A stretch of 64,000 nucleotides of DNA, from positions 124,001 to 188,000 of the forward strand of contig NW_005434631.1 in the NCBI RefSeq assembly GCF_000315625.1, written 5' to 3'. The stretch comes from Guillardia theta CCMP2712. Lineage: Eukaryota; Protista; Cryptophyta. Shown piece by piece: positions 3,001-56,752 of this stretch; within the stretch, counting starts at the first letter, position 1; every line of letters starts with the position of its first letter. Made by a program: the position numbers and the translations under genes. The notes beneath the pieces were generated by a model. The model was not told the origin of the DNA. It made no database searches and saw only the letters and a list, made by a program, of their open reading frames with translations.

Positions 3001-6000
3001 TCTCGTCCTGCCGAGTCCACACTGGCGCACACGCTCCAAGTCAGGCAGAAGAGGAAGATACCCTCCACCTGCGTTGCGCTGTCCTTTTCGCTCATCTTGA
3101 ACTGCTTCGGGTCTTCTACTTTGAAGTCTGTCAGCATGCTGTCGATCATCTTGAACAGCCCCCATGCCATCATGTTGTCCGAGGAGGGCGAAACCTCTTT
3201 CAGCTCTTTCCTCAGGAACTTCAAGGCCGGAGGCACCAGCCATCGGAAGAGAGACTCAATGATTTCTTTGTTCGCTATGGAGACAGTCTCAGGTAACGTG
3301 TTGAGCCATGAGCTCAGGCTGGGCAGCATTCCCATCTGGTGGGGCTCATAGTACACCATCCCGCAACGGCTAACTGTCGCTGGTGAAGCCACTTCCAGAT
3401 CTTGCGGTTCGAAGATCATGTTCATGGACGAAGACATCTGAATGATCTCTCCGCTCACCAGACAGAGCTTCTTGTTGTCATCAAGGACAGTGTTCATGTT
3501 CTCGATCCACACCGCATCGACAGGCCCATCAAACAGAACCCATTTACGATCCGGCGTTTGATCAGATGCAGCAGCCCGGAAGTTGATTGCAAGGATGCCA
3601 TCGGTCCATTCATGAGAGACGGGATCAAACTGTCCATACAGCTGGCCCAATGTCACGCTCTTGGGGTTCATGGTGTAGATTCGGACCTTGTTCTCTTCAT
3701 TCTGCCCCAGCTCGTTGAGTTTACCCAGAGAGTCACTTAAAACGCGGTAGCTGCGAGTTTTCCCTCCATACGACAGGCCAACCACCATGAGACCATGTCG
3801 AACGACAATCATTTCATACAGCTCGATTGTTTTCTGAATGAAGTATTTCTCTGGCTGCAGATTGCTCTGCTCACAGCTCCAATTGATTGCGGACAGCATG
3901 TTCAAGTAATCTGGCTTCGGCAACTCGACGCCAGGAAATAAATCTTTGGCGATGCCTTCAAACAGAGGTAGATCATGTGAGAGAAACTTTGGCACATTCA
4001 CATCTCTAATAGCACGGAGCATTAAAATTGCCTCGTCTTGTTCAGTGTACACTTGCTTCAGATTGCCTGCTGCTCGAAGGACGGCCATCACAGCTCTCAT
4101 GCCGTAGTCATAGTGCGTCTGAGATGATAACTGCTCACTACATAACTTGTATGTAGCAACAATCTTTTTGGCAAGTACTCGTGCGTCACTGAAGCCAAAC
4201 GACATCAGCAATATTTCTCCAATCATGGCATAATCGGGAACCATCATCGCAACAGTCCTGAACAAAACTTTCAAATTGTCGGGCAATTCACTGCGTCCAG
4301 CATATCCAGGATTCATCTGCGACCCGAAACATCAGGTTGATGGGAAAGCGCAAAGAATCTTACCGTGATGAAAACTGCGCAGGAGCGAACGAGCTGAAGG
4401 GTGCTCCCTTCAAACTCGAACTGGGTTGAACCCAACTGGACGTTCCTTTGGATCACCATGATCTGCTGCGCTACAACACTGAGAACTTCGAGCTCAATCC
4501 TGTTGAACTCATCGAAGCATGCCCAAGCACCACAGCTGGCAACTCCTTTGAAGAATTTTCCCATAGCGAGATAATCAAGTCCATCAGAGCAATTGAAAAC
4601 GACGCAGTAATTTGCAATGGCCTTGGCAAGATCTTTTGTCGTCTCAGTCTTACCTGTCCCAGCTGGTCCTTCAGGAGCGCCACCAAGGTAGAGCTGTAAA
4701 GCCCCCATCAAGGTGCGGTATGCTCGGTCAGTGAGAGGAGTCACGACAAGACGCGAGCTGACACCCAGGTACTCGTACCCGTACTTGATCTCTGCTGTGA
4801 TCATCTTACAGACCACATTGTTTTCTTCCCAATAATATCGAAGTTGAGCAAGCCAAGAGAAGTCTAAATTCGATTTGACACCTTCGTCTGCCAGATTGAC
4901 CGTCATGTCCCTTGCGTGAACATCTAAGACCACCATGGCTCCGATGCTGTTTCTCTGAAGTTTCGTCAAGGACCCTCGTACCAATTCAACGATGTCATCA
5001 AGTTGACGAGTACATTTCTCTGCATATTTCCTGACTCCTTGCCCACTGGGATCCACGATTGCTTGTTCAACTTCACTGGTCCAGTACATTTGTCCGATTG
5101 CTATAACAACCATTCCTGGCCATTCGAGAACCCATTTTTCTCTATTCAATTCTTGATAGCTTATCCTTCCTTTTGAGCACTGATCTTTGACAGCTTCCTT
5201 CATCATGCCTTCTGTTTGCAACAACCATTTCTCAACAGCCCCACGTGCTTCTGCTGGATTAATCTTGCGAGGCCATGGAACGTTCTCACCCTCCCCACTG
5301 ATCATGCCCTCTGCAATTAAGTCCTCATTGAAGTTTAACTTTGATATGGCCTCGAAACATTTCTTCAGATGAGGTTGTACGCGCAGAGGATCTTTGGTCT
5401 CAGCCAAGATTTCGAGCAACTCGTCGTTCGACAAGAAAAAGAACCGAGGAAAAAACAATCTCTTCTGTTCTAGGTAAGCATTCAGTCCCTTGTTGATCAA
5501 ATCCAGTAACTCAAATGACTCCTTGAGGGAATCAATCAAGCCATCTGTCTTGACAAAACTTAGAACTTTGGGGTCCTCCATGCATCGCGAAACAGTTGTT
5601 CGAAACACATTATCAACTTGCCCAAATCGCTCTGCTTCCTTCGGCATTTGCTTTTTGATGTCATCTGACGCAAAGATGGGTTCTAGGTAGAGCCATTGTG
5701 CTTGAACTTTTAACCAATAGTCAATCACTTCCTGGGTGGTCTGCAGGAAATCATCCCACTCTTTTGCCCTTTGCATGAAAACCTTGATGTAAGGAGATGC
5801 TAGCATGGTTTGAGTCTTGACAATTTGATCATCCAATATTGCTTGTATCTCATCAACGCTACTTCCAGCCAGTATGGAAGTTCCTGTGTCGCGGTATGGC
5901 TGCATTGCAAATTCAATTTCTTTCCACTCGGACAACTGCTTATCAAGGTTCTTCTCTAATGACCATTCTTTGCTGGCTGAGTCACTGATTTCTTCCATCT

Positions 6001-9000
6001 TCGGAATGTGAGGTTCCAATTTCTTGTCGATCATATCTTGAAGACTTGTTCGCTCATTAGGCTTAATAGAGAAACCGACGACCTGAGCAAAGGCTTCCCA
6101 ATGTCTGCTCCTCAAGCCGCCATTACAAAGAATGGCTACCAATGGAACGTGGGGCTTGAAAGAGCCTATCAAATCTTTCATGAATTCAGAGAGGGCAAGC
6201 ATACTCGGCTTTTCACTGTATGTCTTTGTGAACTTGTAAGCTTGCCTCCAAGAGTTATCAATGTCAGATTCGACCTTCTCAGGATCTAGGTCAAGAATAG
6301 ATCCGTGGAGCATCGACTCAATCATCTGTTGACTGTCATAGACGGTCCTATACAGGTTTTCGAAGGGCTCTAGTTTCTTGAGGTTCTGCTCTACTTGAGG
6401 ATTGACTGTTGGATTCCATCCGAATATTTCTTCTTGCTCGTTGATTTTGTTCAATTCTTCTTGCAGCTCTTCCAGAGTAGTGTGGACCTTGATCGCTTGT
6501 TGCATGTAGCTTTCTACAAGCTTCGGATCTCCCAATTGTTCAAAAGAGACGATTTCTTGCGTTGTAGCATCTACAGCCTCTTCGAACTTCTTCTGACGAT
6601 CTCTCAATTGATCCTCCATCTTTTCTTCTTGCGTCAATATCCTTTCCATCGCCGCGTCCAGTACAGGAACAATTTTATCTGGCCATAGATAGGTCTTTGT
6701 GTTCAGCATCATCACATCATCCGGTATATCCTTGCCAAGTTCATGCAAGAAGTCCATTCCTTTCACAACCTTTTCGATCTTGTTTTGAAGCAAGGCTTGC
6801 TCTTGTGGGGCTGCTTCAAGATAAGCTTTCAACGCCTTCATCTCATGCGATTCCTTCGGCTTTTCCATCGCTCTTGAGTTCAAACCTTCAAATCTCTGAC
6901 AGATTTCTTCCATCTCTTCATTTGTTTCCACTAGCACCTGCTGTAGCAGCGTGTCTGCAATAGCATTAGCCTTCAGAGAAATTCCTCTCTTCAGCAGCTC
7001 CGTCTGAACCACAAATAAACCCATTTGAACTTCTTCGATTGTCAAATCTTTCACATCTTCAGCAGCCTTCCTGTACCGTTTGATTTCCTTCCTGTAATCA
7101 TCTAAAGAGTGCTTTGCATGTTTGAATTCTTCTCCAATTTTAACGTGATCGATTGATAGCAAATTGTTGTACTCATGGATGAATTGTTCGAAAATTTTGA
7201 CGATTCTCTTGGGACCTTCAAGGTTGTTTACAATCACATGGGCTACCCTGGACTTAGCTGATCTAATCGATTCTTCGTCACTTCGCACAACTCGCAGACA
7301 AGTGAGGCTGTCAGAGTTGTCGAACAACTGAGCTGCGAGACTGGACGCGTCCTCTTCCAACTTTTCATCTGTGACTAAACGATCATCATTTTGAGCTGCG
7401 GAGTCTGAATAAGGCGAATAAGATGCCATATCTGCGCAAGTTATAACAGGAAATCCGTCAACAGCAGAGACCGCTTGATCTATGATAGAGGAAAGAGTCG
7501 ATTCCATCTCTTCAAGAGTAGGTTCAATACGGATTTGATTTCCACGTATCATCAGCTTCACGAAGAGGGCAGGAGAAATCTTGATGTCGTTTGCTCCGTT
7601 GACAGACGCTTGGATCTCTTCATCATCAAGCGGGTGGAATTCTTCGAAGTACTGTGCTAGATGGTTGCAACTTGCCTCCAGCAAACCTCGCAATTGCCTC
7701 GTCAACAGAACAGATATTGATCGAAATAGATGAGTTTTTGACTTCACTAGGTCGTCGTGAATATCATATGGAGGTCGAAGCAAACTTTTGATGATTTCTG
7801 GTAACCATTTCTTCTTGAGAATATTCCGTACAGATTCGCAGTAATCGATCTGCGAAATTTTGAACTTTTCAAGCTCTAAAGTCTTAGCGGAACCACTGCT
7901 CGCGACATCAAACAGAATAGAATTCTCGAAAGATTTTGTGGTGCTTTCTCTCATCCAAATTCTTTGTATCTCTAGAATACATGAATTGACAGAGAAGAGC
8001 ATATTAGAAATGTTTTCACGGGCCTGTCTGACACTATGGGTCCAACCTTGTGGAGGGTTGTTGTTACCTCGATTCAAACTAATCAAAACAGTGAGTTATC
8101 CTGCGAATGAAGATATTTGTTACCTTTCTCCGAAAACGAATTCCAATCTGTGCTTCAAATGTATCTCTCGAGGTGTCTCGTGGATCTGTAAGCGCCTGCG
8201 CTCGGGCCGATGCAAGAGAAGATATTCTGCTATGCTCAACCGTACACTATCAATATACATGTCATTCATCTCAGACAGCATCTCATCGACCAAAACATCA
8301 AGTTCCGTCTTGTTGATGCCAGTAAAGGAATCAATCTTTGCTACTTCGCAAGCATTGTATATCCATTCCTTCTTGATCGGAGCTATTGAATCGCTTCCAA
8401 TTCCAGACATGAAGGATTCAAATTTCTACCAAATAAAGTCAAGGCGCGAAATACAGTCAAGAAGCCTATTACATCGATCCACTCAATCTCCTCCTTGCTC
8501 AAAGGATTTATGATGTCAACTCTCTTCAATTGCAACTCCCTGGAAACAAATATTTTGAATCAGCAACGTTCAAAAGACACAGCGCAGAGGGACCTATGCC
8601 TGTGAAATCTCATTCGAGACTCAGAAGGCTCTCCATGTTCAGGCGTATCTTCACGGTTGTTGAGATCATCGTATGACACCGAAGCTTCAGATCTGTTCGA
8701 CTTTTTGGGACTACCTGAAGGATGATGCAACGACGACTGCAAAGTAGAAACACAATCAATCCAACTTCTTGTCTGGGTAATCTTCAAACCTTGCTTGCAT
8801 GCCCCACGTCATGACCTGAAGGGCGCCTCTCCAACAGAGCTTTCGTTAGCTTCATCGCTTTCGGGCTGTAGTAGCTTGCGATTCTGTCACTTGGACTTCG
8901 GAACACTAGGTCATGCTCAAAAGAAGGAGCAGCTCGAGTCATGGCGCATGCGTTGAAAGGCGAGCCATACTTGGATGCCGTCTCTCCTTGCGTCTGCGAT

Positions 9001-44468: not shown

Positions 44469-44954
44469 CTATATGGATCTCTTTGACCAACTTTGACGCC
44501 CACAACCCATCATGAGATCCATCACGTCTTCATAGACTTCCTCTTCAAAAAAAGATTGATACCTGTATCCTGCCAGGTCGTTTCTATCCTGGAAAGCAGT
44601 GATCTGGGTGGTTGTTGAAAGAGGAGGGCTGTAGATGGACGTGTCTCTTACTTCCAAACATGACGAATCTAAAGCTGTCTTGCTGTCTTCGGACGATGAC
44701 GTGTCAGCAGAGTACGAAGGGGCGCTATCACACCAGCTCTGCTCTAACCACCATTTGTTGATCCCAAAATATTTGCAAGCACTCTTGAGCGCAGAGAGTG
44801 AAATACCGAGTTTAGCAGCAGCTTCGCGTTGGCTATATTGACGATGATTGCGCAACGTGATTTTGCAAAGGACGACTGGTTGACGCGAGGCTTTCACCTC
44901 GTTCTTGCGTTTCCTTGGCACGATGGTGAGTTGGAGGGGTTGAGAAGCTTCCAT
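44469..44954 (-). CDS. RWP-RK domain transcription factor (variant motif)
   Basis: ITL...YSQREAAAKLGISLSALKSACKYFGINKW matches the RWP-RK consensus. Intronless. Confidence 0.85.
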   Translation of the reverse strand: MEASQPLQLTIVPRKRKNEVKASRQPVVLCKITLRNHRQYSQREAAAKLGISLSALKSACKYFGINKWWLEQSWCDSAPSYSADTSSSEDSKTALDSSCLEVRDTSIYSPPLSTTTQITAFQDRNDLAGYRYQSFFEEEVYEDVMDLMMGCGRQSWSKRSI

Positions 44955-45653: not shown

Positions 45654-48600
45654 TCAGGGTGGAGAGAAGAAGATGCGACAAAGATCGTCGAACCCGTCAA
45701 AGTTTTCTTTTTTCCACATGATCCGTGCCTTGAAATCGGTCAGCACTCGACAAACTGCCTTGACTCCTCCCTGCTCGCTGCTGATCTGAGCCACGGCTCT
45801 GCCCTTGTCCTTGTTTCCCGTCGCTTCACTGCCGCGGTAACAGACCAGCATGTCGGCGTTAGCAAGGATGACTGACTGCATCGGGTCAAGAGCAGCTCGG
45901 TCCGGATCGCCGCAGATAGAAGTAAAGATCGCGCAGTCACGAGCAGTGACCCTCTGGTTCAGACTCGCTGATACAAGCTCCGCACAGAGCTCTCGCGCCC
46001 TCGTTCCGGTCACCTTGAACATAGGGAAGCACTGTGCGATGCAAGTGACAATATCGAAGATTCCTTCCCTCACCGCTTCTGCTCCTCTCCCGTACTCGAG
46101 ATCCAGCAGGTGGCTCCTGCACGGCAGACTTTCAACCTGCAGGTTGTGCAGGTTTGTCCTCTTTCCCCCAATATTCAGCCTGATGACAAGGCGGGGAAGG
46201 GAGTCCTGGACCTGGTTGTCCGGCAGGTTGGAAGGAATGCGAAGCAGCATCGTACTAGAGTTCAAGACAACGTGATGAAAGAAGCAAGGTTGTAGCTTGT
46301 GCTCCTCCTCCCCATCATCATCTCCTTCACTACCGTCACTCTCTTGATCAGAGAAGAAACCTTCCACCAGCACTTCCTCATCCTGCACAAACCCAGACCC
46401 AACAACGATCATCCACGAGGAAGAGACTTGGCGGGTGTCTGTGATGACAGGCTCGTGTAAGCTGCTGATTTGCCATTGAGCAGACGCATCTGTTGTCCAG
46501 GTCCCATCGCTCACGCTGCGAGGGAAGGAAACAAGCCAGGTCTCCTCCTCCTCCTCCTCCTCCTGCCCATCTGGCTCAAGCTCGGCATGGACGAGCCTTT
46601 GCTGCGACAGCTTGAGGTCCAACTTGTTGCCTTGTCCTGACATCCGCGGAGAGGAGCAGCTGCCCAACTTGATGACGCTGAACTTGACGGGGGGATGGCG
46701 ACCGCGGGGGTCTCGCAGCTCGTGCTCGCAGCTCTCAGTGAAGTCAGTCAGTGACCCGAGGAATCGAAATCGACGAGACGTGGATGCGTCGACAGCAGCG
46801 AGACATGTCAAGCTGACCGTACGAGAGCGCGTGTGCTCAATCTCAATGACGGCATCGCCCACGTTCCAGGGCAGGTGACCTCCTCCCGGCTTGTAGAAGG
46901 TGATAGTGATGGTCGAGCTCTTGGGAAGCAGAGCTTGCATCTTACGGCAAGCAGCAGCGTCTACTCTCGAGGGCTTGAGCAGACAAGTGTCCTCCCCTTC
47001 GTCGTCACTGTCGTCGGCGCACAGACTGTCCGCAACAAGTTCTTCCCAGGCAATCAGGAAATGAGAGCCGATGTCGCCGAAGCCGACGACGACGCTTGTG
47101 CTGATAGAGAAGGGTTGGTCACGCTTCCCTCCTGATCTGCTGATGTGCAAGGTGAGTTCCTCGAAGAAGGACGAGAGGTCGTCAGCATCACTGAGGACTC
47201 GAGGAGAGATGTCCACTATTTCAACTCTCTGCCGATTGTCACCAATGGTAGCGAGACTATTCAGACCCAACCCGTACAGGTGCATGAAAGGCTGACGGAG
47301 AGATACAACGAGGCTCCTGCTCTTCGGAGCGAAGTATTGTGAAGCGAGTTGGGACGACCAGACATGATTTTGTAATCCCTTGAGCTCAAGACTGGGAAAA
47401 AACTTCTGGACGATCTCATGAAGACGGGAGGCAGAGGAAGAAAAGTTCTCCACCTTGCCCATGATTGTCATGTCCGAGGCGAAGCTGCTTGCCAGCAAAG
47501 TGTCGCACTCGTAGTGCAGGTCAAACAAACCGACCAAGAAGGAGAATCTGAGAACCATCAGAAGGTCCGAGGCAAAGAAGTCGGGCTGAGATTCAGACGT
47601 CCTCTCCTTGGGATCCTTGAGGAAACCGCAGTACAGGTAGCTGAGAATAATTTTCATCGCGTTCCTCGAGAGTTTCTTCCCGTCTACTTCAACCTTGCTG
47701 ACCTGGGGATTCGACCTGACGAGGAAAAGGAAGAACTCTGACTTCGCGCTGACGACGTCACGGTGAGAAGCCTCGGGGGGTAAGCCATCCTGGAAGAGGA
47801 AGAACAAGTCCTTGGGAGGAAGGGGAATCGAGATGACGCGCGAAGTCCCGTCCAGGCCCTTGCTGAGAACCTCTACCTCCTGTGCGCTCTTGCGGGCTGT
47901 CGAGACGGGGGCTGCAAGGCCCTTCCAGTTAACTCCATCGATCCTCTTGAGATCCCGGCAGAATTTCTTGTCGCAGCAGAGGTCTTGCTCGATCAGAACG
48001 TCAAGTCTCGAAGTCAAGGTAGAGACGTGGTTCACTGCGTTGCACTTGATGTCAGGTCCACCCCACCTCAGCCTCACCAGCAGCTCGTTCACCCTGTTGA
48101 CCAAGTTTGCGCTGCTCTTGATGCTCTTCACGTTTACCTCGTCCAGCAAGGACATCTCGAAAGTCACTTTCCATGCTTCTGTTCCTCTCACGGCTATGGA
48201 GGAGAGTTGGACGTCAAGAAACTCTGCCCCGCTGTCGGCGCACAGAGCTGAAATTATCCCTCGCAAGAGAACGTCTAGTTGGTCTTTAACGTCTGAAAGT
48301 TTCTTGGTCCCTGACAGCTCAACGCTGACAAGCTCCCGCTTCTTGAGCTCGTACTCGTGACATGGTTGGAGCATTCGAATCGCTCCCCTGAGGCATCCCA
48401 GGTGAAGGTGGAGGGTCGGGATTGGAGTCTCATCCAGCTCCTCCTCCGTCATCTCCCCAGCAATACACTTGACCGACTGCAAGCTCATCCCGCACTCCAG
48501 CAAGAAGCCTCGCCCGCACTTGGGGCAGACGTGGCGGGAGCAGTGGCGGAGGAGGTTGAAAGGAGAGGCTCGCCGCGACTTGAATCGCTTTACGAGCACA

Positions 48601-51600
48601 TCACAGCAGTCCTTGTAGGAGTCCCGCTGACTGCAAGCAACCTGCTGCTGGTGCCCGCAGCCTGGTAGCGTCACCTTGACGGGCTGCGAGCACTGACCGC
48701 AGGAGGAGCTGCAGACCTTGAGACACTGATGCTTGCAGGAGGTGAAGGAGTTGAGACAGGGGCTGAGGCATCGGACCGACTGCTCGCAGGAAGCACGGCA
48801 GAAGAGCTTCAGAGTGTGCTCACAGTCCCTAGATCCCTCCTCCGCAGTCGTAGGAGCTTCAGCATCGCAGCCCCCGTCGTAGGAGCATCGGTCAAAGTCT
48901 TCAGGGAACAAGAGTAGCTTGCCTTCCTCCTTGCCTGGTCGTGGCTTGATGCCGATGCTGAGCTGGACTTCAGGATGTCTCCGGCACACAAGTTGAAGGA
49001 GATCGTCCTCCACATAGCGGTTCGTATCCTTTGCCTGCCGCACGAAGGAGCCCAGCAGGTTCTCAGCTGAGGAGGCGGGCTTGTGCTGCAAGAGGCCCTT
49101 GAAGTTTGCGAGGACGAACATCGCCATCCTCGCTCGCGAGAAGGCGACACTGAGCCTGTGGGGATCGCGAACCCATCGGCAGCAGAGGTCCTGCTGGGAG
49201 CGACAGAAGCAGAGGATGATGACGTCAGCCTCGAGCCCTTGAAACCCGTCGACCGTCGAGACAGAGACTCGCAAGAGGTTCTCCGTAGACTTGTCGGAGA
49301 AGCCCCGATGCCTCATGTCATGCTCGGCGCGAAGGAGGGAGCGGCTGTGAAGACAGTCCCGGATCTCGTCGCATTGAGCTGCATACATGGAGAGGATGTG
49401 GATCCTGGAGTAGCTCAGACCCTGCCGGATCAACCAATCAGCTATCCTGACAGCGAGAGCGCTCTCCTTCCGGTTCCTCGAGCTCAGCAGCCTTGCGCTC
49501 TTCTCCTCCTTGTACGGATGGCCGATTAGCATACACCTGCCATGGAGCTCGAAGTCGCTGCCTGACTCCTCGCTGCATCGGATCATGCTTGTCATCTCGA
49601 AGCTTGTCTTGCTGCATGCGTCCTGCAACTCAGCTGGAGAGTATAGAGGCCAATCGAGCGCTGAACTTCTGAGGTACTCCATGATGTTGGAGGGAACTCT
49701 GTACTGAGAGACGAGGGTAGCGACTTCGGTCTCGAGGTGACACAAGCGAGCCAGCAGGGAGATGTCAGGAGCAACGAGGTCTCGGCTAAGATCTACAACC
49801 CGCTCTCCTCCCTCCTCAGTCGCTACTTTGTGTCTCGTCCACACCCCCGGGTTCAGGTAAGGGCGGAGCTGCTTGGTATCGCCTAGAAGGAACACCTTCT
49901 TCACGCTGCTGGGAATGCAGGTCAACAAGGAGGCTTCATGTATGCTCCCTGCCTCTTCGACGATGATGACATCGAAGTTCAACCGCATTAAAATTTCCGA
50001 CATGTTTTGACACCCTGAGATCGTGACCCCGACAACTCTCGCGCTCTTCAGCTTCTCTTTCATGCGCTTCTCCTGCTCTTCGACCTTGATGTGGATTCCT
50101 CTGCTCGCCTCTTGCAAGAACTTCTTGAGTTTGCCCTTTTGCATCAGCTGCATGAGCCTCGTAGCGGACGACTTTGACTTCTCTCCGTGAATGATGTTGT
50201 GGAATATCTTCTTCTTCTGCCTCCCTGAAACTTTCGAGCTCGCCGATGTCGACATGCAAGTGCGAGAAGAAAGGTCCAAGAACGAAGAGAGCGAGAACTC
50301 CTCGCCATCCAACCGCTGTGTTTCATGCACCAGCTGGAAGTCGTTGGGCAAGGAGGAAGCACCGACTCTGACTACTTCAATTCCTGCCTTCAGGCTCAAC
50401 TTGTCTCTGATCGCCTGCAAGGTCTGATCTAGAACTGGTCCTGATGGGGAAAGAAAAAGGATCCGACTGTTTCCTCCCTCCAGCAGACGTTCAGCAAGTC
50501 GAATCCCCACGTGAGACTTGCCGGTTCCAGGAGGTCCAACGAGAATGCGGTAAAAATCTTTCTTGTCAGCAGTCAGGCGCTCGAGAGCTCGTCGTTGCTC
50601 GACGTTGTCTCTGTGAAAGCCCAGCTTATTTTGATGTCTACGAAAGAAAGAGTCATCATCGTCACTGTCATCAGTGTCGCTGTGGTCATCTTCGTCATCT
50701 TCTTCGTTGTCATTTTCGTCGTTTGTGTTGTGCTGATACTCAACGTCCTCTTCAATATCATAGTCATCATGTTCCTCTTGTTCACGTTGTTGCTTCGAGT
50801 CGCACGATTTTCCGTCTCTTTCATCTGCGTTACGAGTCAGCGCAAAGAGAACCTCCCAGGCATTTCCCGACCTTTTTTGTTCGACCTGATCTTGAGCTGG
50901 TCTGCTCCGGGTAGATCTTCTTTCAAGTCGTACCGTCTTGTCAACTCGTGGAGAGTCTGGATGTGACTGTCGTCTGTGTCGCATGATGCAAACATGAACA
51001 TCTCGGAGCAGGAGAGTATCTTCGAGATGGCCTGCTCCAGTCTCTCAACAGACAACATGCCTGTGAACCCTTCTGAGTTGTCACCCCCGATCAGGCATAA
51101 GTCGATCATTCCATTCTCGATGAGCAACGCATCGGATGTCTTCAGCGACAGCCACAGCAGCTCAGTGTCAGCTGGGCCTCGTTGCGACTGGAAATTCATC
51201 CACAAGAGCACGAGGCCTTGCTCTCTGAAGTGACTGACGAGGGACTTGTCAATGCGGAAGCGAAGAGCGAAGAAGGACTCCAGCTGAACCAGGCCTAGAA
51301 AGCCAGCGTCTCTGACGCAAACACCGAAAGCTGAGTTGGAGGGCGAGGAGTGAAGGAAGGACTGGACGAGATGATGGATGGGAAAGAAAGTCTCGATCTT
51401 GATGATGTTGAATAGACAGACAATCATGTCTGATGAGGAATCGAAGACAGCTTGATTCCGAACCAACGACACGTCATCTTCCAGCCACTTCTTGTCAGGC
51501 AGCGGGTCCAAGTGCAGAGGCCTGACAGTCTTCTTGCTCTTCCTCTCTCTGCACGCAATCAGCGTCGGGTCTTCACCCTCTCTTACGAACGCTCGCAGGT

Positions 51601-54600
51601 ACAAGAAGTCTGCCTTGGAAACATTTTGCAGCTCGTCTCTCCAGTCGGAGGTGAAGCAGATCTTGTTGGTCTTGATGGCTTGCTGCACGTTCTCCTTGAA
51701 TGTCGGGCAGTCCAGCTGCCCTATGATTGCAAGCCCATGGGAATTTTCTTTGTTGTTCCATAAGTTGTCAACATGCGCGATCGTGCACTTGTGGTACCTC
51801 GACTTGAACTTGTGAACGAAGAAGGCACAGTCTTTGACTCGCCTGCCTCGGCAGTTGAAGCATGAATGTCGACAACAGAGATGGCATCCGTCGCATCTAT
51901 GAGGTAAGAAAAACACCTCTCCTTCAAACTCTTCCTCCCCTTCCTCGCCGACTTCCCCTGCCTGCCCCTTGAAGTCTTCGATTGTTCTGTCGTCACAACA
52001 GTATGCTGCAGCGTACCCACTGCACAGACACTTGCTGTCTTGCTCTTCCATCGTCTTGTGGAGAACCTTGTACTGACTTTTCAACACGCAAGCAAGACAA
52101 GTGGCCTCGGTGATCTGCCAAACTCCCAACAGCTCGCGGTAGATCAGCTTGCCGACTGCAAAGTTGTGAACGACACCCTGCTTGCTGCAAGAGATACACA
52201 ACCATCCTCCTTCCCATCGAACAGCTTTGTCATGTGACACAATCATCGAGCAACTTGCACACTCCCGCTGCTCTTCATCTTGTGCGCTGTCAGCACGTTG
52301 AACTTCGATCTCCAACGCTTCTCCTAATGTCAGCCTCTTGGAATCCGGTTTATCAGCCTCCTTCTTGGACGGTTGAGAAACAGTTGAGTTGGGGAGCTGC
52401 TGGACAGGTGCAGAGGCCTTAAACCTATGTTTCTTGGACTGAGCTGCAGCTGACCCTGTAGACCTAAGGAGAGGTGGAAAGTCTTCGAGTGGCAGCTCAT
52501 GCCCTTGTTGAGATCTGCGGCTGCTTCTTGAGCTTAATTCCTCACGTGAGATAGTCTGAGCCGAGACGTCAGGAGCTGAGAAATTTTGATCTGCAACCAA
52601 CTTGTTTGCTTGTTTGCAAGGAGAAGACTGTGCGCACAATCTGCAGAACTTGCAAGACTTACAAACTGCTGCTGTTGAGTTGCAAGAGCAAAGGTCGGAA
52701 TGATCGATCCGCTTCCCCTTGCAAAACTTTCCAAGTGCAGTACAATACCCGCAATGAGAACATCGAAAGCTCTTATGGAACTCCAAGTCATGGCCAAGGG
52801 GATTTCTGAATGAATCCAGTCTCAGTTCTTGTCCTAGGGAACGTGCGAGTACGAACTGACTGTACACGTCGAGCAGGCAGGTGGTGGATAAGAATCGAAT
52901 GAAATCATCTGATTCCGATCTCAACGGTTCTTCTGCGCTGACCAGCTGTTGACCAGCAGTATCATGATCGAACGGCCACCTCCCTTGAAAGGTGTTGTGG
53001 GTGTAGCAATATCGAGCAATGTCAAGCCACATGGAGCTCAGGGACGGTGAAACGACGCTGGTGGCCTGCTGCACGTCTGACTCTTCAAGCCCGTAGACAT
53101 TGACTTGCTCGTGCGCCTCGTAAAAGTTTACAGCAAGTTCTGCGAGCAACTTGGCATGCCCGACGAAGCAGAGGAGCTGCGAGGCTCGACCCATGGCTGA
53201 GTTGAGGCGCTTCGGGTTGAACACAAACCCCTCGTCCTTGTACAAGTCGCTGGCGAGCCAATCCTCGGAGGCGCGTACCGTTGATATGATAACAACCTTC
53301 TTTTCTCGCCCTTGAATCGACTCGACCGGCCCCACGTTCACTCGGCTCAGCTGCAGCGCATCGTTGGGATGCTCTCTCAGCAGCTTGCGGATAATTTCGA
53401 TCTGCTTCCTATGCCCTGATATCACCTGCACATCTTCTGCGCTGATCATGGGGCGGCAGTTCCTCAGCAGGTCCACGAGGATGCTCGTGATGCTCTCAGC
53501 CTCGGACACGTTGAAGAAGGATGGCGAGTCAACATCTTGACGGTCGTTTCCGAGAACGTCAAGGAACAGGACGGGGAACTTGTTGTTGTTGGGCATGAAG
53601 TTCCACCTGGACAACCAGCTGACGTCCAAGAGGCCTGCTGACTGAATCTTCCCCTCGTAGAAGAGGCGAGAAGAGAGGGCAACTATGTCCGGATGGTTGC
53701 GGTAGTTGACCAGCAGCTGCGTCCACAGCTTGTGCTCTTGCTTGTACCACTCCGTCTGCAGCAATCGTTCGATGACTGAGACTCCGAGGCCATGGGAGCG
53801 AGCGAGCTTCGACAAGACCTTCGGCCCGATCTGCTCGCTGTCGCCAGACAGGATCACGTTGGTGACGCTGCTGGCAAGGCAGAGAGGCAGCAGAGCAGCA
53901 GGCTCGAGCATCTGAGCAGCTTCGTCGATGATGATGTGCGAGAAGCTGACTTTGAGGTCTGACCACAAGAGGAGGCCAGAAGTCTCCCAGGTACTCACGA
54001 CGAGTCGCTTCATAGCCAACAGCTGAATTGGAGGCAGGAGGAACATGTTCATCTCAGGAAGCATGAACGTGTAGGTCTGAATGAGTTCGCTGCGGTTGTT
54101 CTGAGAGCCTGGAAAGCACTGGTTGACAGATCTGTCCGGAGAGATCAGCCGGAATATCCACTCGCGCGGAAGCAAGTTGATTTCATGCAAGCGCTCGACG
54201 AAGAGATCTGCTGCGCTGTTGGTTTCTGTGCAGACAAGAATCCTGGTCTGAGGGAAAGTGAAGAGGATCTGAAGGATAGACTCTATCATCGTGACAGTCT
54301 TTCCGGTTCCAAAGGGCCCGTGCAAGATGAATGGAGGATACATACCCGGGGAGTTACACATGCTCAAGACTGTACCCATGCACCTGCGCTGCTCTTCATT
54401 CGGGTTTGAAATGCTTTTGCACGAAGGATTGACGAAGCAGTCGGGAGGGCTGGAGAACATGTGGTTGGGAAGCGAGGGGTAGAGCAGACGATCTGAAACC
54501 TCATCGACCGCATGGTGAAGTTTGCGAAACCTCAGGCGGTCACTTTGAGCCACTTGAAAACGAACACAAACACAGTCGTCTGTTGTCGCCTGGTTCAGAA

Positions 54601-56677
54601 AGTCTGCAAACCCTTCAGGCATTTGAACTTCGACGCATTCTTTCAAGACTTTCAAGATGGTCCCCATGTACTCCTCGTTGTATGGTGACGCGCTCGCCCC
54701 GGAGTTGTCACAGACGATCCAGGCGATCACGTGATCGCCGATCCCCAGCGAGGGGCGACGCTCACTGAGAAGATTTGGGTCAGAGATGACTAGCTTCCAT
54801 TGACCTTTCTTGAACTTCTCAAACTTCGCACCTCGAGTGTCAAACTCGCGAATCTTGTTTTGGTATTCCCTCTCCTCCAACCACAGCAAGCTGTGCAGAC
54901 GCTTCCTGTACTGACCTGCAGTGCAACATGGTGCTGACAGAGAATTCTGCAACACCTCGAGGTCAGGAGCTAAATATGCTTCAACTTGAGCGTTTTGCAT
55001 CAAGCTCTCTTCATCAAACTTCTTTTGCGCTGGTTCTACTGTTGTTCGCTTGCGGAGCTGCTCGTCCCAGACGCGAAAGGGTCTGTGAACTCCTCTTGTC
55101 TGAGTCACACCCAACGTAGTTAAATCCTTCTGTTTGGTGATTTTGAGTTGAATGTTGAAGGAGTAGATTGAACTTTGATCTCCATCATTGTAAACTGAAA
55201 TCAACGTCTTCAAGTTATGCTCACCAAACGTGTACGGAGGTGTTGGTCTGAATTCCACACTCAAGTTTCCTGTCATTCCAAATATTTGCTTTGAGAGTTC
55301 ATGGAAGTAGTTTGGATCTGTATGGAGCTCAATATCTTTGACCTTTCGTTTTGCAGTGATTTCCATGTCGAAGCAAGCTGATGTACCTAGATCGAGGAAT
55401 ACAACTTGTTCGTTCTCAAGACTTGAACCCTTGTACATACACCTCACGGAGAGCAGATCTTTGTCTGACTTCTTGGCACCTCTTCCAAGTGAGATGAGTC
55501 CGTTCTTAGTATCCACTTTCAGTTTGACCACATCTTGATTCGAATCATACATGAAGTATGCAGGCTCGATATCGCATATCCTCTGTATGAGTAGGCTGAA
55601 ATACGACTCAGGATAGGCTGTTGGAAACACAAAACGTAGAAATCTGTCGCACAGTTCTTGGTAGATCCATGGGAGATTTGCAGACACGAAGTACTCAAGC
55701 TCGAGCACGGTCTTCGAGTTTTCTCGCTCCAGATGCATTTGGATAGCATGTGTCAACGCAGTGTATCCAACCTTCAAGCACCCGAGCTTGCCTTTCGGAT
55801 GCATCTTACCCTCTTGCTCGGATGCTTCCAACGCGTCTGAGTACTTCTGAAAGCTGACAAAGAAGAGGTTGTTGCTTCCTGCTTTCTTGATCACCTCACT
55901 GTTTGCTCGCGGATGGAACAACTTCCCGAACTTGGAAAACTTCATTCGAATTGAATCCACTGAAGCATTCGGGTCGAGCTCCAGGACCTGCAACGTGAAG
56001 AAGAGCGATGTGGCCGACGGGCTTTTTTGCGCCGATTGTTCTAACTTGCTGATCTGCAAGAAGAAAGGAGGGCGATCATGGAAGCGCTTGATAGCTTTTT
56101 GACAGTCTGCAGAATGAACCAAATCGACGTAGAAGACATGATGTCGGGAGAGGATGTCCTTGCGGACGCCATGAGGGCAGAGTCTGAAACTGTGAGGGTG
56201 GCTTCCATAATCAACCTGATTCTTGCCGTTGAAGATTTGAGCAATCTGTTGTGCATCTAGAATCTTCGGGCTCCGGCAGAGAGAAACACGCAATGTGTTT
56301 CCTTGCACGCTCGAGGGAGGTTGATGAGTGTAGCTGCTCAGTCGCAAGAACAAGGGCTGAGACATGCTGAGCAGTGCAACGGCTCTGCTTGCTAGGCTTT
56401 CATCTTGGAAGTTTAAAACCAAGTAGTTTTCACCCTTGAAGATGTTTTCAGTGTCGGGCTGGTCCAGCTGCTGACTGTTCAGAGCTTTGGTGACCTGTCG
56501 GACGTCCAGAATCTTGGGAGTCAAGGGTGTGAATTCAGCCTTGACTAGATATCCTGCCTCCTGAGGGACTGAGCCTTTAGTCCATACACTGTATAACTCT
56601 CGAATGGGATGAGCGAAGTGGCAATTATCTCCGTACTTGCAGTATCCCCTGATCCAGAACTTGCAAATCTCAGGCAT
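45654..56677 (-). CDS. Giant (~3,650 aa) dual SF1 RNA helicase: CCCH + RRM-like + MOV10/HELZ-like helicase + Cys-rich fingers + ZNFX1-like helicase + NF-X1 fingers + BTB-like + IPT-like
   Basis: ORFs 50837..56728 and 45654..50984 are joined in frame by intron 50825-50871. Helicase 1: GPFGTGKT, IIIDEAAQ, GDSEQIGP, NYRNHP, SPSFFN, VESIQGRE, RLNSAMGRA. Helicase 2: GPPGTGKS, IVEEAG, GDTKQLRP, TVDGFQGLEAD, RLSVAFSRAR. Confidence 0.88.
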
Positions 56678-56752
56678 TTGAGATGGGAAGGAGTGAGAAA
56701 ACAACAAGACCTCAAAGTCTGAGTTCACAAGTCAGTGAGATGATCGAGTGAC

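What the first reader, a model, noticed from the sequence alone, without database searches (positions are those of the whole stretch)
45654..56677. MOV10/HELZ-type and ZNFX1-type helicases fused in one ~3,650-aa protein: candidate single-chain RNA-defence or silencing machine
Seen: the two ORFs are bridged by a 47-nt intron at 50871-50825 (GTCGGG...GCTGAC...CGCAG), the same length as the dynein intron. Splicing gives KK-D-ERDGKS in frame and 3,658 codons from ATG 56677. Known: helicase 1 has MOV10/SDE3/Armitage/HELZ hallmarks (YRKRLHSLLWLEE, ERRPSL..GD, NSAADL, SPSFFN). Helicase 2 has ZNFX1 hallmarks (VEEA Walker B, GD..QLRP, L.L.C..HPE, DF...GGC, then NF-X1-type Cys/His fingers). Both families act in small-RNA silencing and in antiviral or retroelement restriction, normally as separate proteins. 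HELZ2 has two helicase units but with an RNB domain, not this architecture. Inference: this is a fused RNA-surveillance hub. I know of no described protein with this arrangement.
Basis: partly seen in the sequence, partly recalled or inferred. Interest (0 to 1): 0.9.

Follow-up and report, generated by a model that had tools for sequence, protein, structure and literature searches.

The report
Two different RNA helicases fused
A cryptophyte alga (probably Guillardia theta) very likely makes one giant ~3,650-residue protein joining a MOV10/HELZ-type and a ZNFX1-type RNA helicase; an uncultured eukaryote encodes the same layout in one reading frame, but the splice in this genome is not yet shown by RNA and the function is unknown.

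Summary
Two minus-strand ORFs, 56677-50872 and 50824-45654, abut with no spacer, and each holds a complete SF1 (AAA_11/AAA_12) helicase.

Helicase 1 falls in the MOV10/SDE3/HELZ2-like clade and has an N-terminal CCCH finger. Helicase 2 falls in the ZNFX1 clade. It shares that clade's Walker B (VEEA), GD..QLRP, C..HPE and DF..GGC motifs and Cys-rich fingers. It lacks the ZNFX1 domain and the RZ finger.

No RNA read spans the proposed 47-nt intron (50871-50825), so the exact splice sites are unproven. The fusion itself is well supported:
- An environmental contig encodes a collinear homologue of both halves as one uninterrupted 4,266-codon ORF, with a protein kinase at its end.
- In Hanusia phi both halves carry ORF numbers of what appears to be one transcript contig.
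- ORF2 has no start codon of its own upstream of its Walker A, apart from an ATG inside conserved ORF1 coding sequence.
- The two helicase trees are congruent.

Function is inferred only: an RNA surveillance or defence machine. A small-RNA role is doubtful, because no Piwi domain was found in this genome. This is a new domain architecture built from known parts. I found no description of it.

The parts
50872..56677 (-). Exon 1: 1,935 codons plus the first base of a split codon. Order of parts: CCCH finger, RRM-like region, MOV10-type barrel, helicase 1, Cys-rich segments, conserved C-terminal block
   Evidence: 63% identical over 1,907 aa to Hanusia phi P0001
56606..56671 (-). CCCH zinc finger (ORF1 residues 3-24)
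   Evidence: Pfam zf-CCCH, E 1e-7, above the curated cut-off
54602..54838 (-). MOV10-type beta-barrel (residues 614-692), including ERRPSLGIGD
   Evidence: Pfam PF21634, 22.2 bits, just under the 23.6-bit cut-off
53153..54460 (-). Helicase 1 core (about residues 740-1175): GPFGTGKT, IIIDEAAQ, GDSEQIGP
   Evidence: AAA_11/AAA_12; MOV10L1/MOV10 are the best named hits at about 1e-70; inside the MOV10/SDE3/HELZ2-like clade, SH-aLRT 100; motifs
50882..51880 (-). Conserved C-terminal block of ORF1 (residues ~1600-1932), family-specific, ending ..LKIRS
   Evidence: aligned with Hanusia P0001 and with P0242 residues 1323-1680
50825..50871 (-). Proposed 47-nt GT-AG intron; the CTGAC branch-like motif holds the ORF1 stop codon. 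Alternative boundaries: 50871/50816, 50885/50818, 50852/50818
   Evidence: not confirmed by RNA
45654..50824 (-). Exon 2: last two bases of the split codon, 1,722 codons and the stop
   Evidence: 62% identical to Hanusia phi P0241
50625..50822 (-). Acidic low-complexity linker (about 66 aa); shorter in Hanusia and about 12 aa in P0242
49104..50606 (-). Helicase 2 core (ORF2 residues 73-573): GPPGTGKS, IIVEEAG, GDTKQLRP, VAFSRAR
   Evidence: AAA_11/AAA_12; best solved structure is ZNFX1 9q9z; inside the ZNFX1 clade, SH-aLRT 95; motifs
48453..48995 (-). Post-helicase LxLxCxRHPE and DFxxxxxDGGC motifs followed by NFX1-like Cys-rich fingers (residues ~610-790)
   Evidence: pairwise E 3e-9 to an Aureobasidium ZNFX1-type protein; matches the Cys-rich repeats of many ZNFX1-clade proteins; no Pfam zf-NF-X1 hit
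47604..47765 (-). Weak BTB/POZ-like segment (residues 1020-1073)
   Evidence: Pfam BTB, 17-18 bits, below the cut-off; the region is conserved in P0242
45987..46721 (-). Conserved C-terminal region (residues 1368-1612), family-specific, fold unknown
   Evidence: aligned with P0242; AlphaFold model unusable

Best explanation
One nearly intron-free gene of about 11 kb on the minus strand (56677-45654) encodes a single ~3,658-aa protein, probably after removal of a short intron at about 50871-50825. Its order of parts is: a CCCH finger, an RRM-like region and a MOV10-type barrel; then a MOV10/HELZ-type SF1 helicase; then Cys-rich and family-specific domains and an acidic linker; then a ZNFX1-type SF1 helicase with its Cys-rich fingers, a BTB-like segment and a family-specific C-terminus. 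Walker A, Walker B and motif III are intact in both helicases; a canonical motif VI ([VA][AG]x[ST]R[AG][KRQ]) is present only in helicase 2. Shown: the two domains, their different ancestry, and conservation of the fused layout. Inferred, from what is known of MOV10, HELZ/HELZ2 and ZNFX1: the protein is a cytoplasmic RNA surveillance or defence machine. In this reading the N-terminal RNA-binding modules and two 5'-3' motors engage one RNA to remodel it, clear it or flag it, for example viral or retroelement RNA. The Zn-finger and BTB-like parts, and the kinase in the environmental homologue, would supply the output. If the intron is retained, the product would be a shorter protein with helicase 1 only.
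For: Domains. Separate clades, with each Guillardia/Hanusia/metagenome trio monophyletic (SH-aLRT 98 and 99). Motifs. The ZNFX1 structure is the best PDB match of helicase 2. Shared post-helicase motifs and fingers. One uninterrupted 4,266-codon ORF (L001:5001-17801) is collinear with both window ORFs, and the end of ORF1 runs straight into the start of helicase 2. The Hanusia orthologues carry the names 753886-Hanusia_phi.AAC.2 and .3 with consecutive ids, which I read as one transcript contig. The ORF1 orthologue ends 14 residues after the conserved RIRS, as the unspliced Guillardia ORF1 does. In the ORF2 frame the only ATG upstream of Walker A lies inside conserved ORF1 coding sequence. The intron candidate has GT-AG, CTGAC and the same 47-nt length as the one at 4363-4317. 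Both helicases resemble the Mokosh defence helicase MkoA at about 1e-40. Helicase 2 has no close paralogue in the genome.
Against: No spliced read or contig was found. The one raw RNA run gave 3 reads, and the contigs of two runs guessed to be RNA leave 50855-51051 uncovered. Many in-frame GT..AG pairs exist, so the exact boundaries are unproven. In Hanusia the two halves were called as separate ORFs, so that contig is unspliced or frameshifted at the junction. No function has been tested. No Piwi domain was found, and RdRP gave no hit although its control was silent too. Much of the chain outside the helicase cores and matched fingers has no detectable family, and the two AlphaFold models failed.
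Confidence: 0.65

Rival explanations
1. These are two adjacent, separately translated genes. ORF1 ends at TGA 50839-50837, and ORF2 starts at ATG 50984 or by reinitiation. An ancestral fusion underwent fission in the Guillardia/Hanusia lineage.
For: Both Guillardia and Hanusia show a break at the same place. Hanusia P0241 begins with Met shortly before helicase 2. No spliced RNA was seen.
Against: ATG 50984 lies 148 nt inside ORF1 coding sequence that is conserved in ORF1's own frame. The next Met in the ORF2 frame falls after Walker A. There is no intergenic space. The distant homologue is one ORF. Same-strand overlapping genes are unusual in eukaryotes (general knowledge).
Confidence: 0.1
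2. There is no intron. A 1-2 base assembly error between about 50885 and 50839 breaks what is really one continuous ORF.
For: The two frames overlap as open frames from 51044 to 50839. The Hanusia contig clearly has a frameshift elsewhere, in the garbled C-terminus of P0241.
Against: DNA contigs of run X3 match the window without differences across 50488-51928, although they may come from the data the assembly was built from. Hanusia breaks at the same spot. The segment carries intron signals.
Confidence: 0.05
3. The fused protein is real but acts in general mRNA metabolism, such as decay, translational repression or RNP remodelling in the manner of HELZ and UPF1, rather than in defence or silencing.
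For: Helicase 1 has a HELZ-like layout with an N-terminal CCCH and GPFGTGKT (HELZ's role in mRNA decay is cited in PMC10516660). No Piwi was found. It is a single-copy host gene flanked by ordinary genes.
Against: ZNFX1, MOV10 and HELZ2 are best known for antiviral and retroelement restriction (PMC10516660). The nearest prokaryotic model is the Mokosh defence helicase. The homologue carries a kinase, a typical signalling output.
Confidence: 0.3

Closest known systems
HELZ2 (human; two UPF1-like helicases flanking an RNB exonuclease)
   Same: One chain carries N-terminal zinc fingers and two SF1 UPF1-like helicase domains, and both are active ATPases in HELZ2 (PMC10516660). Helicase 1 here groups with the helicases of a HELZ2-like protein, P0033, and shares GPFGTGKT and DEAAQ with it.
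   Different: No RNB domain was found here. According to that paper the two HELZ2 helicases are each other's relatives, both HELZ-like. Here the second helicase comes from the ZNFX1 clade.
ZNFX1 (NFX1-type zinc finger-containing protein 1)
   Same: Helicase 2 lies in the ZNFX1 clade. It shares the VEEA Walker B, GD..QLRP, LxLxCxRHPE and DF..GGC motifs and the Cys-rich fingers after the helicase. Its best solved-structure match is ZNFX1 9q9z.
   Different: It has no ZNFX1 domain (PF25396) and no RZ finger (PF20173), which true ZNFX1s carry. The RZ domain holds the putative catalytic Cys of ZNFX1's E3 activity (bioRxiv 10.1101/2025.09.05.674436). Only a few fingers are present, and about 2,000 residues including another helicase lie upstream.
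MOV10 / MOV10L1 / SDE3 and HELZ
   Same: Helicase 1's best named hits are MOV10L1 and MOV10, at about 32% identity and E about 1e-70. It has a near-threshold MOV10 beta-barrel and sits in the same clade. Its N-terminal CCCH resembles HELZ.
   Different: The MOV10 N-terminal domains PF21633 and PF21635 were not detected. The trio forms its own long branch. No HELZ reference sequence was available to separate HELZ from MOV10.
Mokosh MkoA (bacterial anti-phage helicase)
   Same: Both helicase cores match the MkoA models at about 1e-40.
   Different: This is a eukaryotic multi-domain protein with no PLD nuclease partner detected. The similarity is at the level of the helicase superfamily.

Membership tests
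UPF1-like SF1B helicases | AAA_11 + AAA_12 core with Walker A, Walker B, motif III and motif VI | tested here: met
   Both ORFs; PDB matches to UPF1, IGHMBP2, Sen1 and ZNFX1. Helicase 1's motif VI (LNSAMGRAS) is non-canonical and was not picked up by the motif VI pattern.
MOV10/SDE3 family (helicase 1) | Helicase core groups with MOV10/MOV10L1/SDE3 rather than UPF1 or SETX | tested here: met
   Clade of 18 rows, SH-aLRT 100, excluding G. theta UPF1 and senataxin (quick tree)
MOV10/SDE3 family (helicase 1) | MOV10 beta-barrel and N-terminal MOV10 domains (PF21634, PF21633, PF21635) | tested here: inconclusive
   PF21634 scores 22.2 bits against a 23.6-bit cut-off; PF21633 and PF21635 not detected
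HELZ | N-terminal CCCH finger followed by a HELZ-type helicase | tested here: inconclusive
   CCCH present. GPFGTGKT and DEAAQ match the HELZ2-like P0033. No HELZ reference sequence in the tree; the PABP-binding motif was not tested.
HELZ2 | RNB exoribonuclease domain between two helicases | tested here: not met
   No RNB hit in either ORF
ZNFX1 | Helicase core of the ZNFX1 clade with EEA Walker B and GDHxQLRP | tested here: met
   (here IIVEEAG and GDTKQLRP)
ZNFX1 | NFX1-type Cys-rich fingers after the helicase | tested here: inconclusive
   Pairwise and phmmer similarity to the finger regions of ZNFX1-clade proteins, but no Pfam zf-NF-X1 hit
ZNFX1 | ZNFX1 domain (PF25396) and C-terminal RZ finger (PF20173) | tested here: not met
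   Absent from ORF2 even at E<=1; present in reference ZNFX1-type proteins
Spliceosomal intron at 50871-50825 | Spliced junction seen in RNA | tested here: inconclusive
   No read or contig covers the junction. GT-AG, a branch-like CTGAC and the 47-nt length are present.

The most novel reading that the evidence does not exclude
This is a conserved family of giant two-motor RNA sensors, so far undescribed, in cryptophytes and at least one other uncultured eukaryote. A HELZ/MOV10-type and a ZNFX1-type helicase are wired in one chain as an Argonaute-independent antiviral or anti-retroelement system. The output modules are swappable: Zn-finger/BTB-like here, a protein kinase in the homologue. Retention of the junction intron may switch between a one-motor and a two-motor form.
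Probability: 0.25. Interest if true: 0.8.

Novelty: new variant of a known kind. Interest (0 to 1): 0.55.

Why it matters
MOV10/HELZ2 and ZNFX1 are separate antiviral and anti-retroelement helicases in animals, and relatives of bacterial Mokosh. A natural single-chain fusion of the two lineages is conserved between cryptophytes and a distant uncultured eukaryote, where it also carries a kinase. That implies the two motors can cooperate on one substrate. It offers a compact model for how UPF1-like helicases couple RNA recognition to an output. It would also extend eukaryotic RNA-based immunity to a little-studied algal lineage in whose genome I found no Piwi domain. If only the gene model is corrected, the value is modest: better annotation.

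Tried and rejected
- **RNA evidence.** This was the only read-laying run allowed. The raw RNA run X7 gave 3 reads. Contigs of X1 and X2, which are only guessed to be RNA, cover both ORFs in fragments but not 50855-51051. There were no joints, so the result is inconclusive.
- **Long fused homologues.** A search with P0242, restricted to proteins of 2,346-7,465 aa, returned only P0242 itself.
- **Metagenome scan.** A scan with the helicase 2 alignment gave only generic helicases. Two of the contigs came from human-gut metagenomes and were not examined further.
- **AlphaFold.** Models of ORF1 residues 1240-1935 and ORF2 residues 790-1722 both had pLDDT of about 31. They were unusable, so I ran no fold search.
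- **ESM Atlas.** Feature searches of the two family-specific regions gave no usable hit.
- **Pfam at E<=1 on the linker and Cys-rich segments.** Nothing beyond CCCH, a weak RRM and a weak BTB.
- **Kinase exon downstream.** None in the window.
- **Shared intron motif.** TTCTYTTTGCGCT is not enriched.
- **In-frame GT-AG as statistical evidence.** Rejected, because 206 such pairs exist.
- **Small-RNA machinery.** No Piwi at E<=10. RdRP gave no hit, but its control was silent. Only a sub-threshold PAZ turned up. Absence is not proven in an intron-rich genome searched exon by exon.
Full report
**What is in the sequence**

On the minus strand, ORF 50837..56728 (first ATG at 56677) is followed directly by ORF 45654..50984 in another frame. 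The bases at 50871-50825 read GTCGGG...GCGCTGACTCGTAACGCAG and are 47 nt long. Removing them joins ..IRSNKK to D-ERDGKS.. in frame and gives 1,935 + 1 + 1,722 = 3,658 codons. Left unspliced, ORF1 runs 14 more codons to a TGA that sits inside the CTGAC motif.

The genome is 87.1 Mb in 669 contigs. The closest proteins come from the cryptophyte Hanusia phi. The organism is therefore a cryptophyte. I take it to be Guillardia theta, from my memory of that assembly's size; this is an inference.

**Domains**

- ORF1 has a CCCH finger at residues 3-24, a weak RRM at 233-288, and a near-threshold MOV10 beta-barrel at 614-692. Its AAA_11/AAA_12 helicase runs to about residue 1175.
- ORF2 has AAA_11 at 73-321, AAA_12 at 354-573, and a weak BTB at 1020-1073.
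- Walker A, Walker B and motif III are intact in both helicases. Helicase 1 has GPFGTGKT, IIIDEAAQ and GDSEQIGP. Helicase 2 has GPPGTGKS, IIVEEAG, GDTKQLRP and VAFSRAR. A canonical motif VI was matched only in helicase 2. Helicase 1 has a variant there (LNSAMGRAS), which I read directly from the translation.

**Ancestry of the two helicases**

Helicase 1's best named hits are MOV10L1 and MOV10, at about 32% identity and E about 1e-70. Helicase 2's best named hits are NFX1-type zinc finger-containing protein 1 (ZNFX1) homologues, at 25-28% identity and E 1e-20 to 1e-26. Its best solved-structure match is ZNFX1 9q9z, ahead of UPF1.

I built a 42-row maximum-likelihood tree of helicase cores with quick IQ-TREE.
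- Helicase 1 sits inside a MOV10/SDE3/HELZ2-like clade (SH-aLRT 100), apart from this genome's own UPF1 (identified) and from senataxin.
- Helicase 2 sits inside a ZNFX1 (+Aquarius) clade (SH-aLRT 95).

The ZNFX1 clade shares an EEA Walker B and GDHxQLRP, and helicase 2 has both. After helicase 2, the LxLxCxRHPE and DFxxxxxDGGC motifs and the Cys-rich fingers align with ZNFX1-type proteins (E 3e-9).

ORF2 nevertheless lacks the ZNFX1 domain and the RZ finger that reference ZNFX1s carry. The RZ domain holds the putative catalytic cysteine of ZNFX1's E3 activity (bioRxiv 10.1101/2025.09.05.674436). Helicase 2 is therefore ZNFX1-type, but the protein is not a ZNFX1 orthologue. No RNB domain is present, so it is not HELZ2 either.

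**Is it one protein?**

Direct RNA evidence is lacking. The raw RNA run gave 3 reads. The contigs of two runs that are only guessed to be RNA cover parts of both ORFs but leave 50855-51051 empty, and no joint was reported. The GT-AG pair is also weak evidence by itself, because 206 in-frame GT..AG pairs are possible around the junction.

Four comparative results carry the case.

1. **An uninterrupted homologue.** An exhaustive HMMER search found P0242, a 4,266-aa protein. It is one uninterrupted ORF on a 20.8-kb environmental contig, L001:5001-17801, and a near-identical copy sits on a second contig. P0242 is collinear with both window ORFs:
   - Helicase 1 is 37% identical over 865 residues.
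   - The ORF1 C-terminal block, helicase 2, the Cys-rich fingers, the BTB-like region and the C-terminal region all align.
   - It also has an extra protein kinase at residues 3817-4191.
   - In alignment A2, the conserved end of ORF1 (..VRS) is followed within about 12 residues by the start of helicase 2's N-terminus. The Guillardia break therefore falls in a variable acidic linker.
2. **Congruent trees.** Each helicase forms a monophyletic Guillardia + Hanusia + P0242 trio (SH-aLRT 98 and 99). This fits inheritance as one unit since before these lineages split.
3. **Hanusia.** The Hanusia orthologues of ORF1 (P0001) and ORF2 (P0241) are named 753886-Hanusia_phi.AAC.2 and .3 and have consecutive ids. 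I read this as two ORFs called on one transcript contig, which is an inference from the naming. P0001 ends 14 residues after the conserved RIRS, exactly as the unspliced Guillardia ORF1 does. That contig is therefore either unspliced or frameshifted at the junction. It clearly has a frameshift further on.
4. **No independent start.** In the ORF2 frame the only ATG before Walker A is at 50984. That is 148 nt inside ORF1 coding sequence, which is conserved in ORF1's own frame. The next Met comes after Walker A.

Conservation confines the donor to 50885 or downstream and the acceptor to upstream of about 50630. Four short candidates remain, and the 47-nt one has the best branch and acceptor signals. 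It also matches the 47-nt intron candidate at 4363-4317. I put the fused protein at about 0.85. The exact 47-nt boundaries are less certain, at about 0.6.

**Context**

Helicase 2 has no close paralogue in the genome. Helicase 1's nearest paralogue is 36% identical. The next gene downstream on the minus strand is an RWP-RK protein at 44469-44954, and no kinase exon follows. The locus is unusual here in having two exons of more than 5 kb, while most other ORFs in the window are short.

**How it probably works**

This part is inferred. MOV10, HELZ/HELZ2 and ZNFX1 are UPF1-like RNA helicases, most of which move 5'-3'. They are implicated in antiviral defence, retroelement restriction and mRNA decay (PMC10516660). 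Both cores here also resemble the Mokosh defence helicase MkoA.

The likeliest reading is an RNA surveillance or defence machine. N-terminal RNA-binding modules load the protein onto an RNA, and two different motors act on it. The Zn-finger/BTB-like regions, or the kinase in the homologue, would provide the output.

The small-RNA link is weak. A six-frame search found no Piwi domain in the genome even at E<=10, and only a sub-threshold PAZ. That search can miss intron-split genes. A housekeeping role in mRNA metabolism remains a serious rival.

**Novelty**

Literature searches found no description of a MOV10/HELZ + ZNFX1 fusion. Among the 394 proteins retrieved, tandem helicases do exist, but they pair like with like: the two MOV10-like domains of P0002-P0005, the HELZ2-like P0033, and the double ZNFX1-like P0243. 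Only P0242 and P0390 share this mixed arrangement. It is a new architecture made of known parts, present in at least two or three organisms.

**What failed**

The AlphaFold models of the family-specific regions were unusable. The Atlas searches were blank. The metagenome scan was uninformative. No sequence was taken for human. Two human-gut-metagenome contigs returned by that scan were not studied.

Noticed in passing
window 4313-8086 (-) and downstream; intron candidate 4363-4317: Two giant minus-strand open frames (1,244 and 1,438 codons) are joined in frame by a 47-nt GT-AG segment. It ends ..CGCAG|ATGA like the junction studied here and shares the 9-mer CTTTGCGCT with it. The shared motif is not enriched in the window.
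   Followed up: partly
G000 whole genome; L008:1458-4106 (G000:C54:418957-421605): No Piwi domain hit anywhere in the genome, even at E<=10. The only Argonaute/Dicer-like trace is a sub-threshold PAZ (22.6 bits) in an 883-aa ORF with no other Pfam domain. This raises the question of whether this cryptophyte has canonical RNAi.
   Followed up: partly
L001:1-4824 and L001:16450-17573: On the environmental contig, short ORFs upstream of the 4,266-aa ORF are spaced about 125-175 nt apart. They include CCCH fingers and a stretch weakly like ORF1 residues 181-299, and are probably 5' exons of the same gene. A metacaspase gene lies next to it on the other strand. The homologue ends in a Ser/Thr kinase domain that the window gene lacks.
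   Followed up: partly
P0241 residues ~657-765; P0001 N-terminus: The Hanusia contig appears frameshifted inside the Cys-rich finger region, where the tail is garbled after CRHQCLR. Its ORF1 orthologue starts at the equivalent of residue 49, without the CCCH finger. That transcript contig is therefore error-prone or partly unspliced.
   Followed up: no
P0002, P0003, P0004, P0005, P0243: Several fungal, chytrid, fish and algal database proteins carry two tandem helicases of the same type (MOV10-like twice, or ZNFX1-like twice). They may be real tandem fusions or merged gene models of duplicated neighbours.
   Followed up: no
window 44469-44954 (-): An RWP-RK domain ORF (30.7 bits, above the cut-off) lies about 700 nt downstream of the fused gene's stop. 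It looks like a separate transcription-factor gene.
   Followed up: no
window 48294-48490, 48885-49081, 51946: Contigs of runs X1 and X2 pile up here (word depth 55-78) with loose ends that run into unrelated sequence, for example a CCTCCTCC-rich tract at 51946. These are probably short repeats or low-complexity words shared with other loci, not expression peaks.
   Followed up: no
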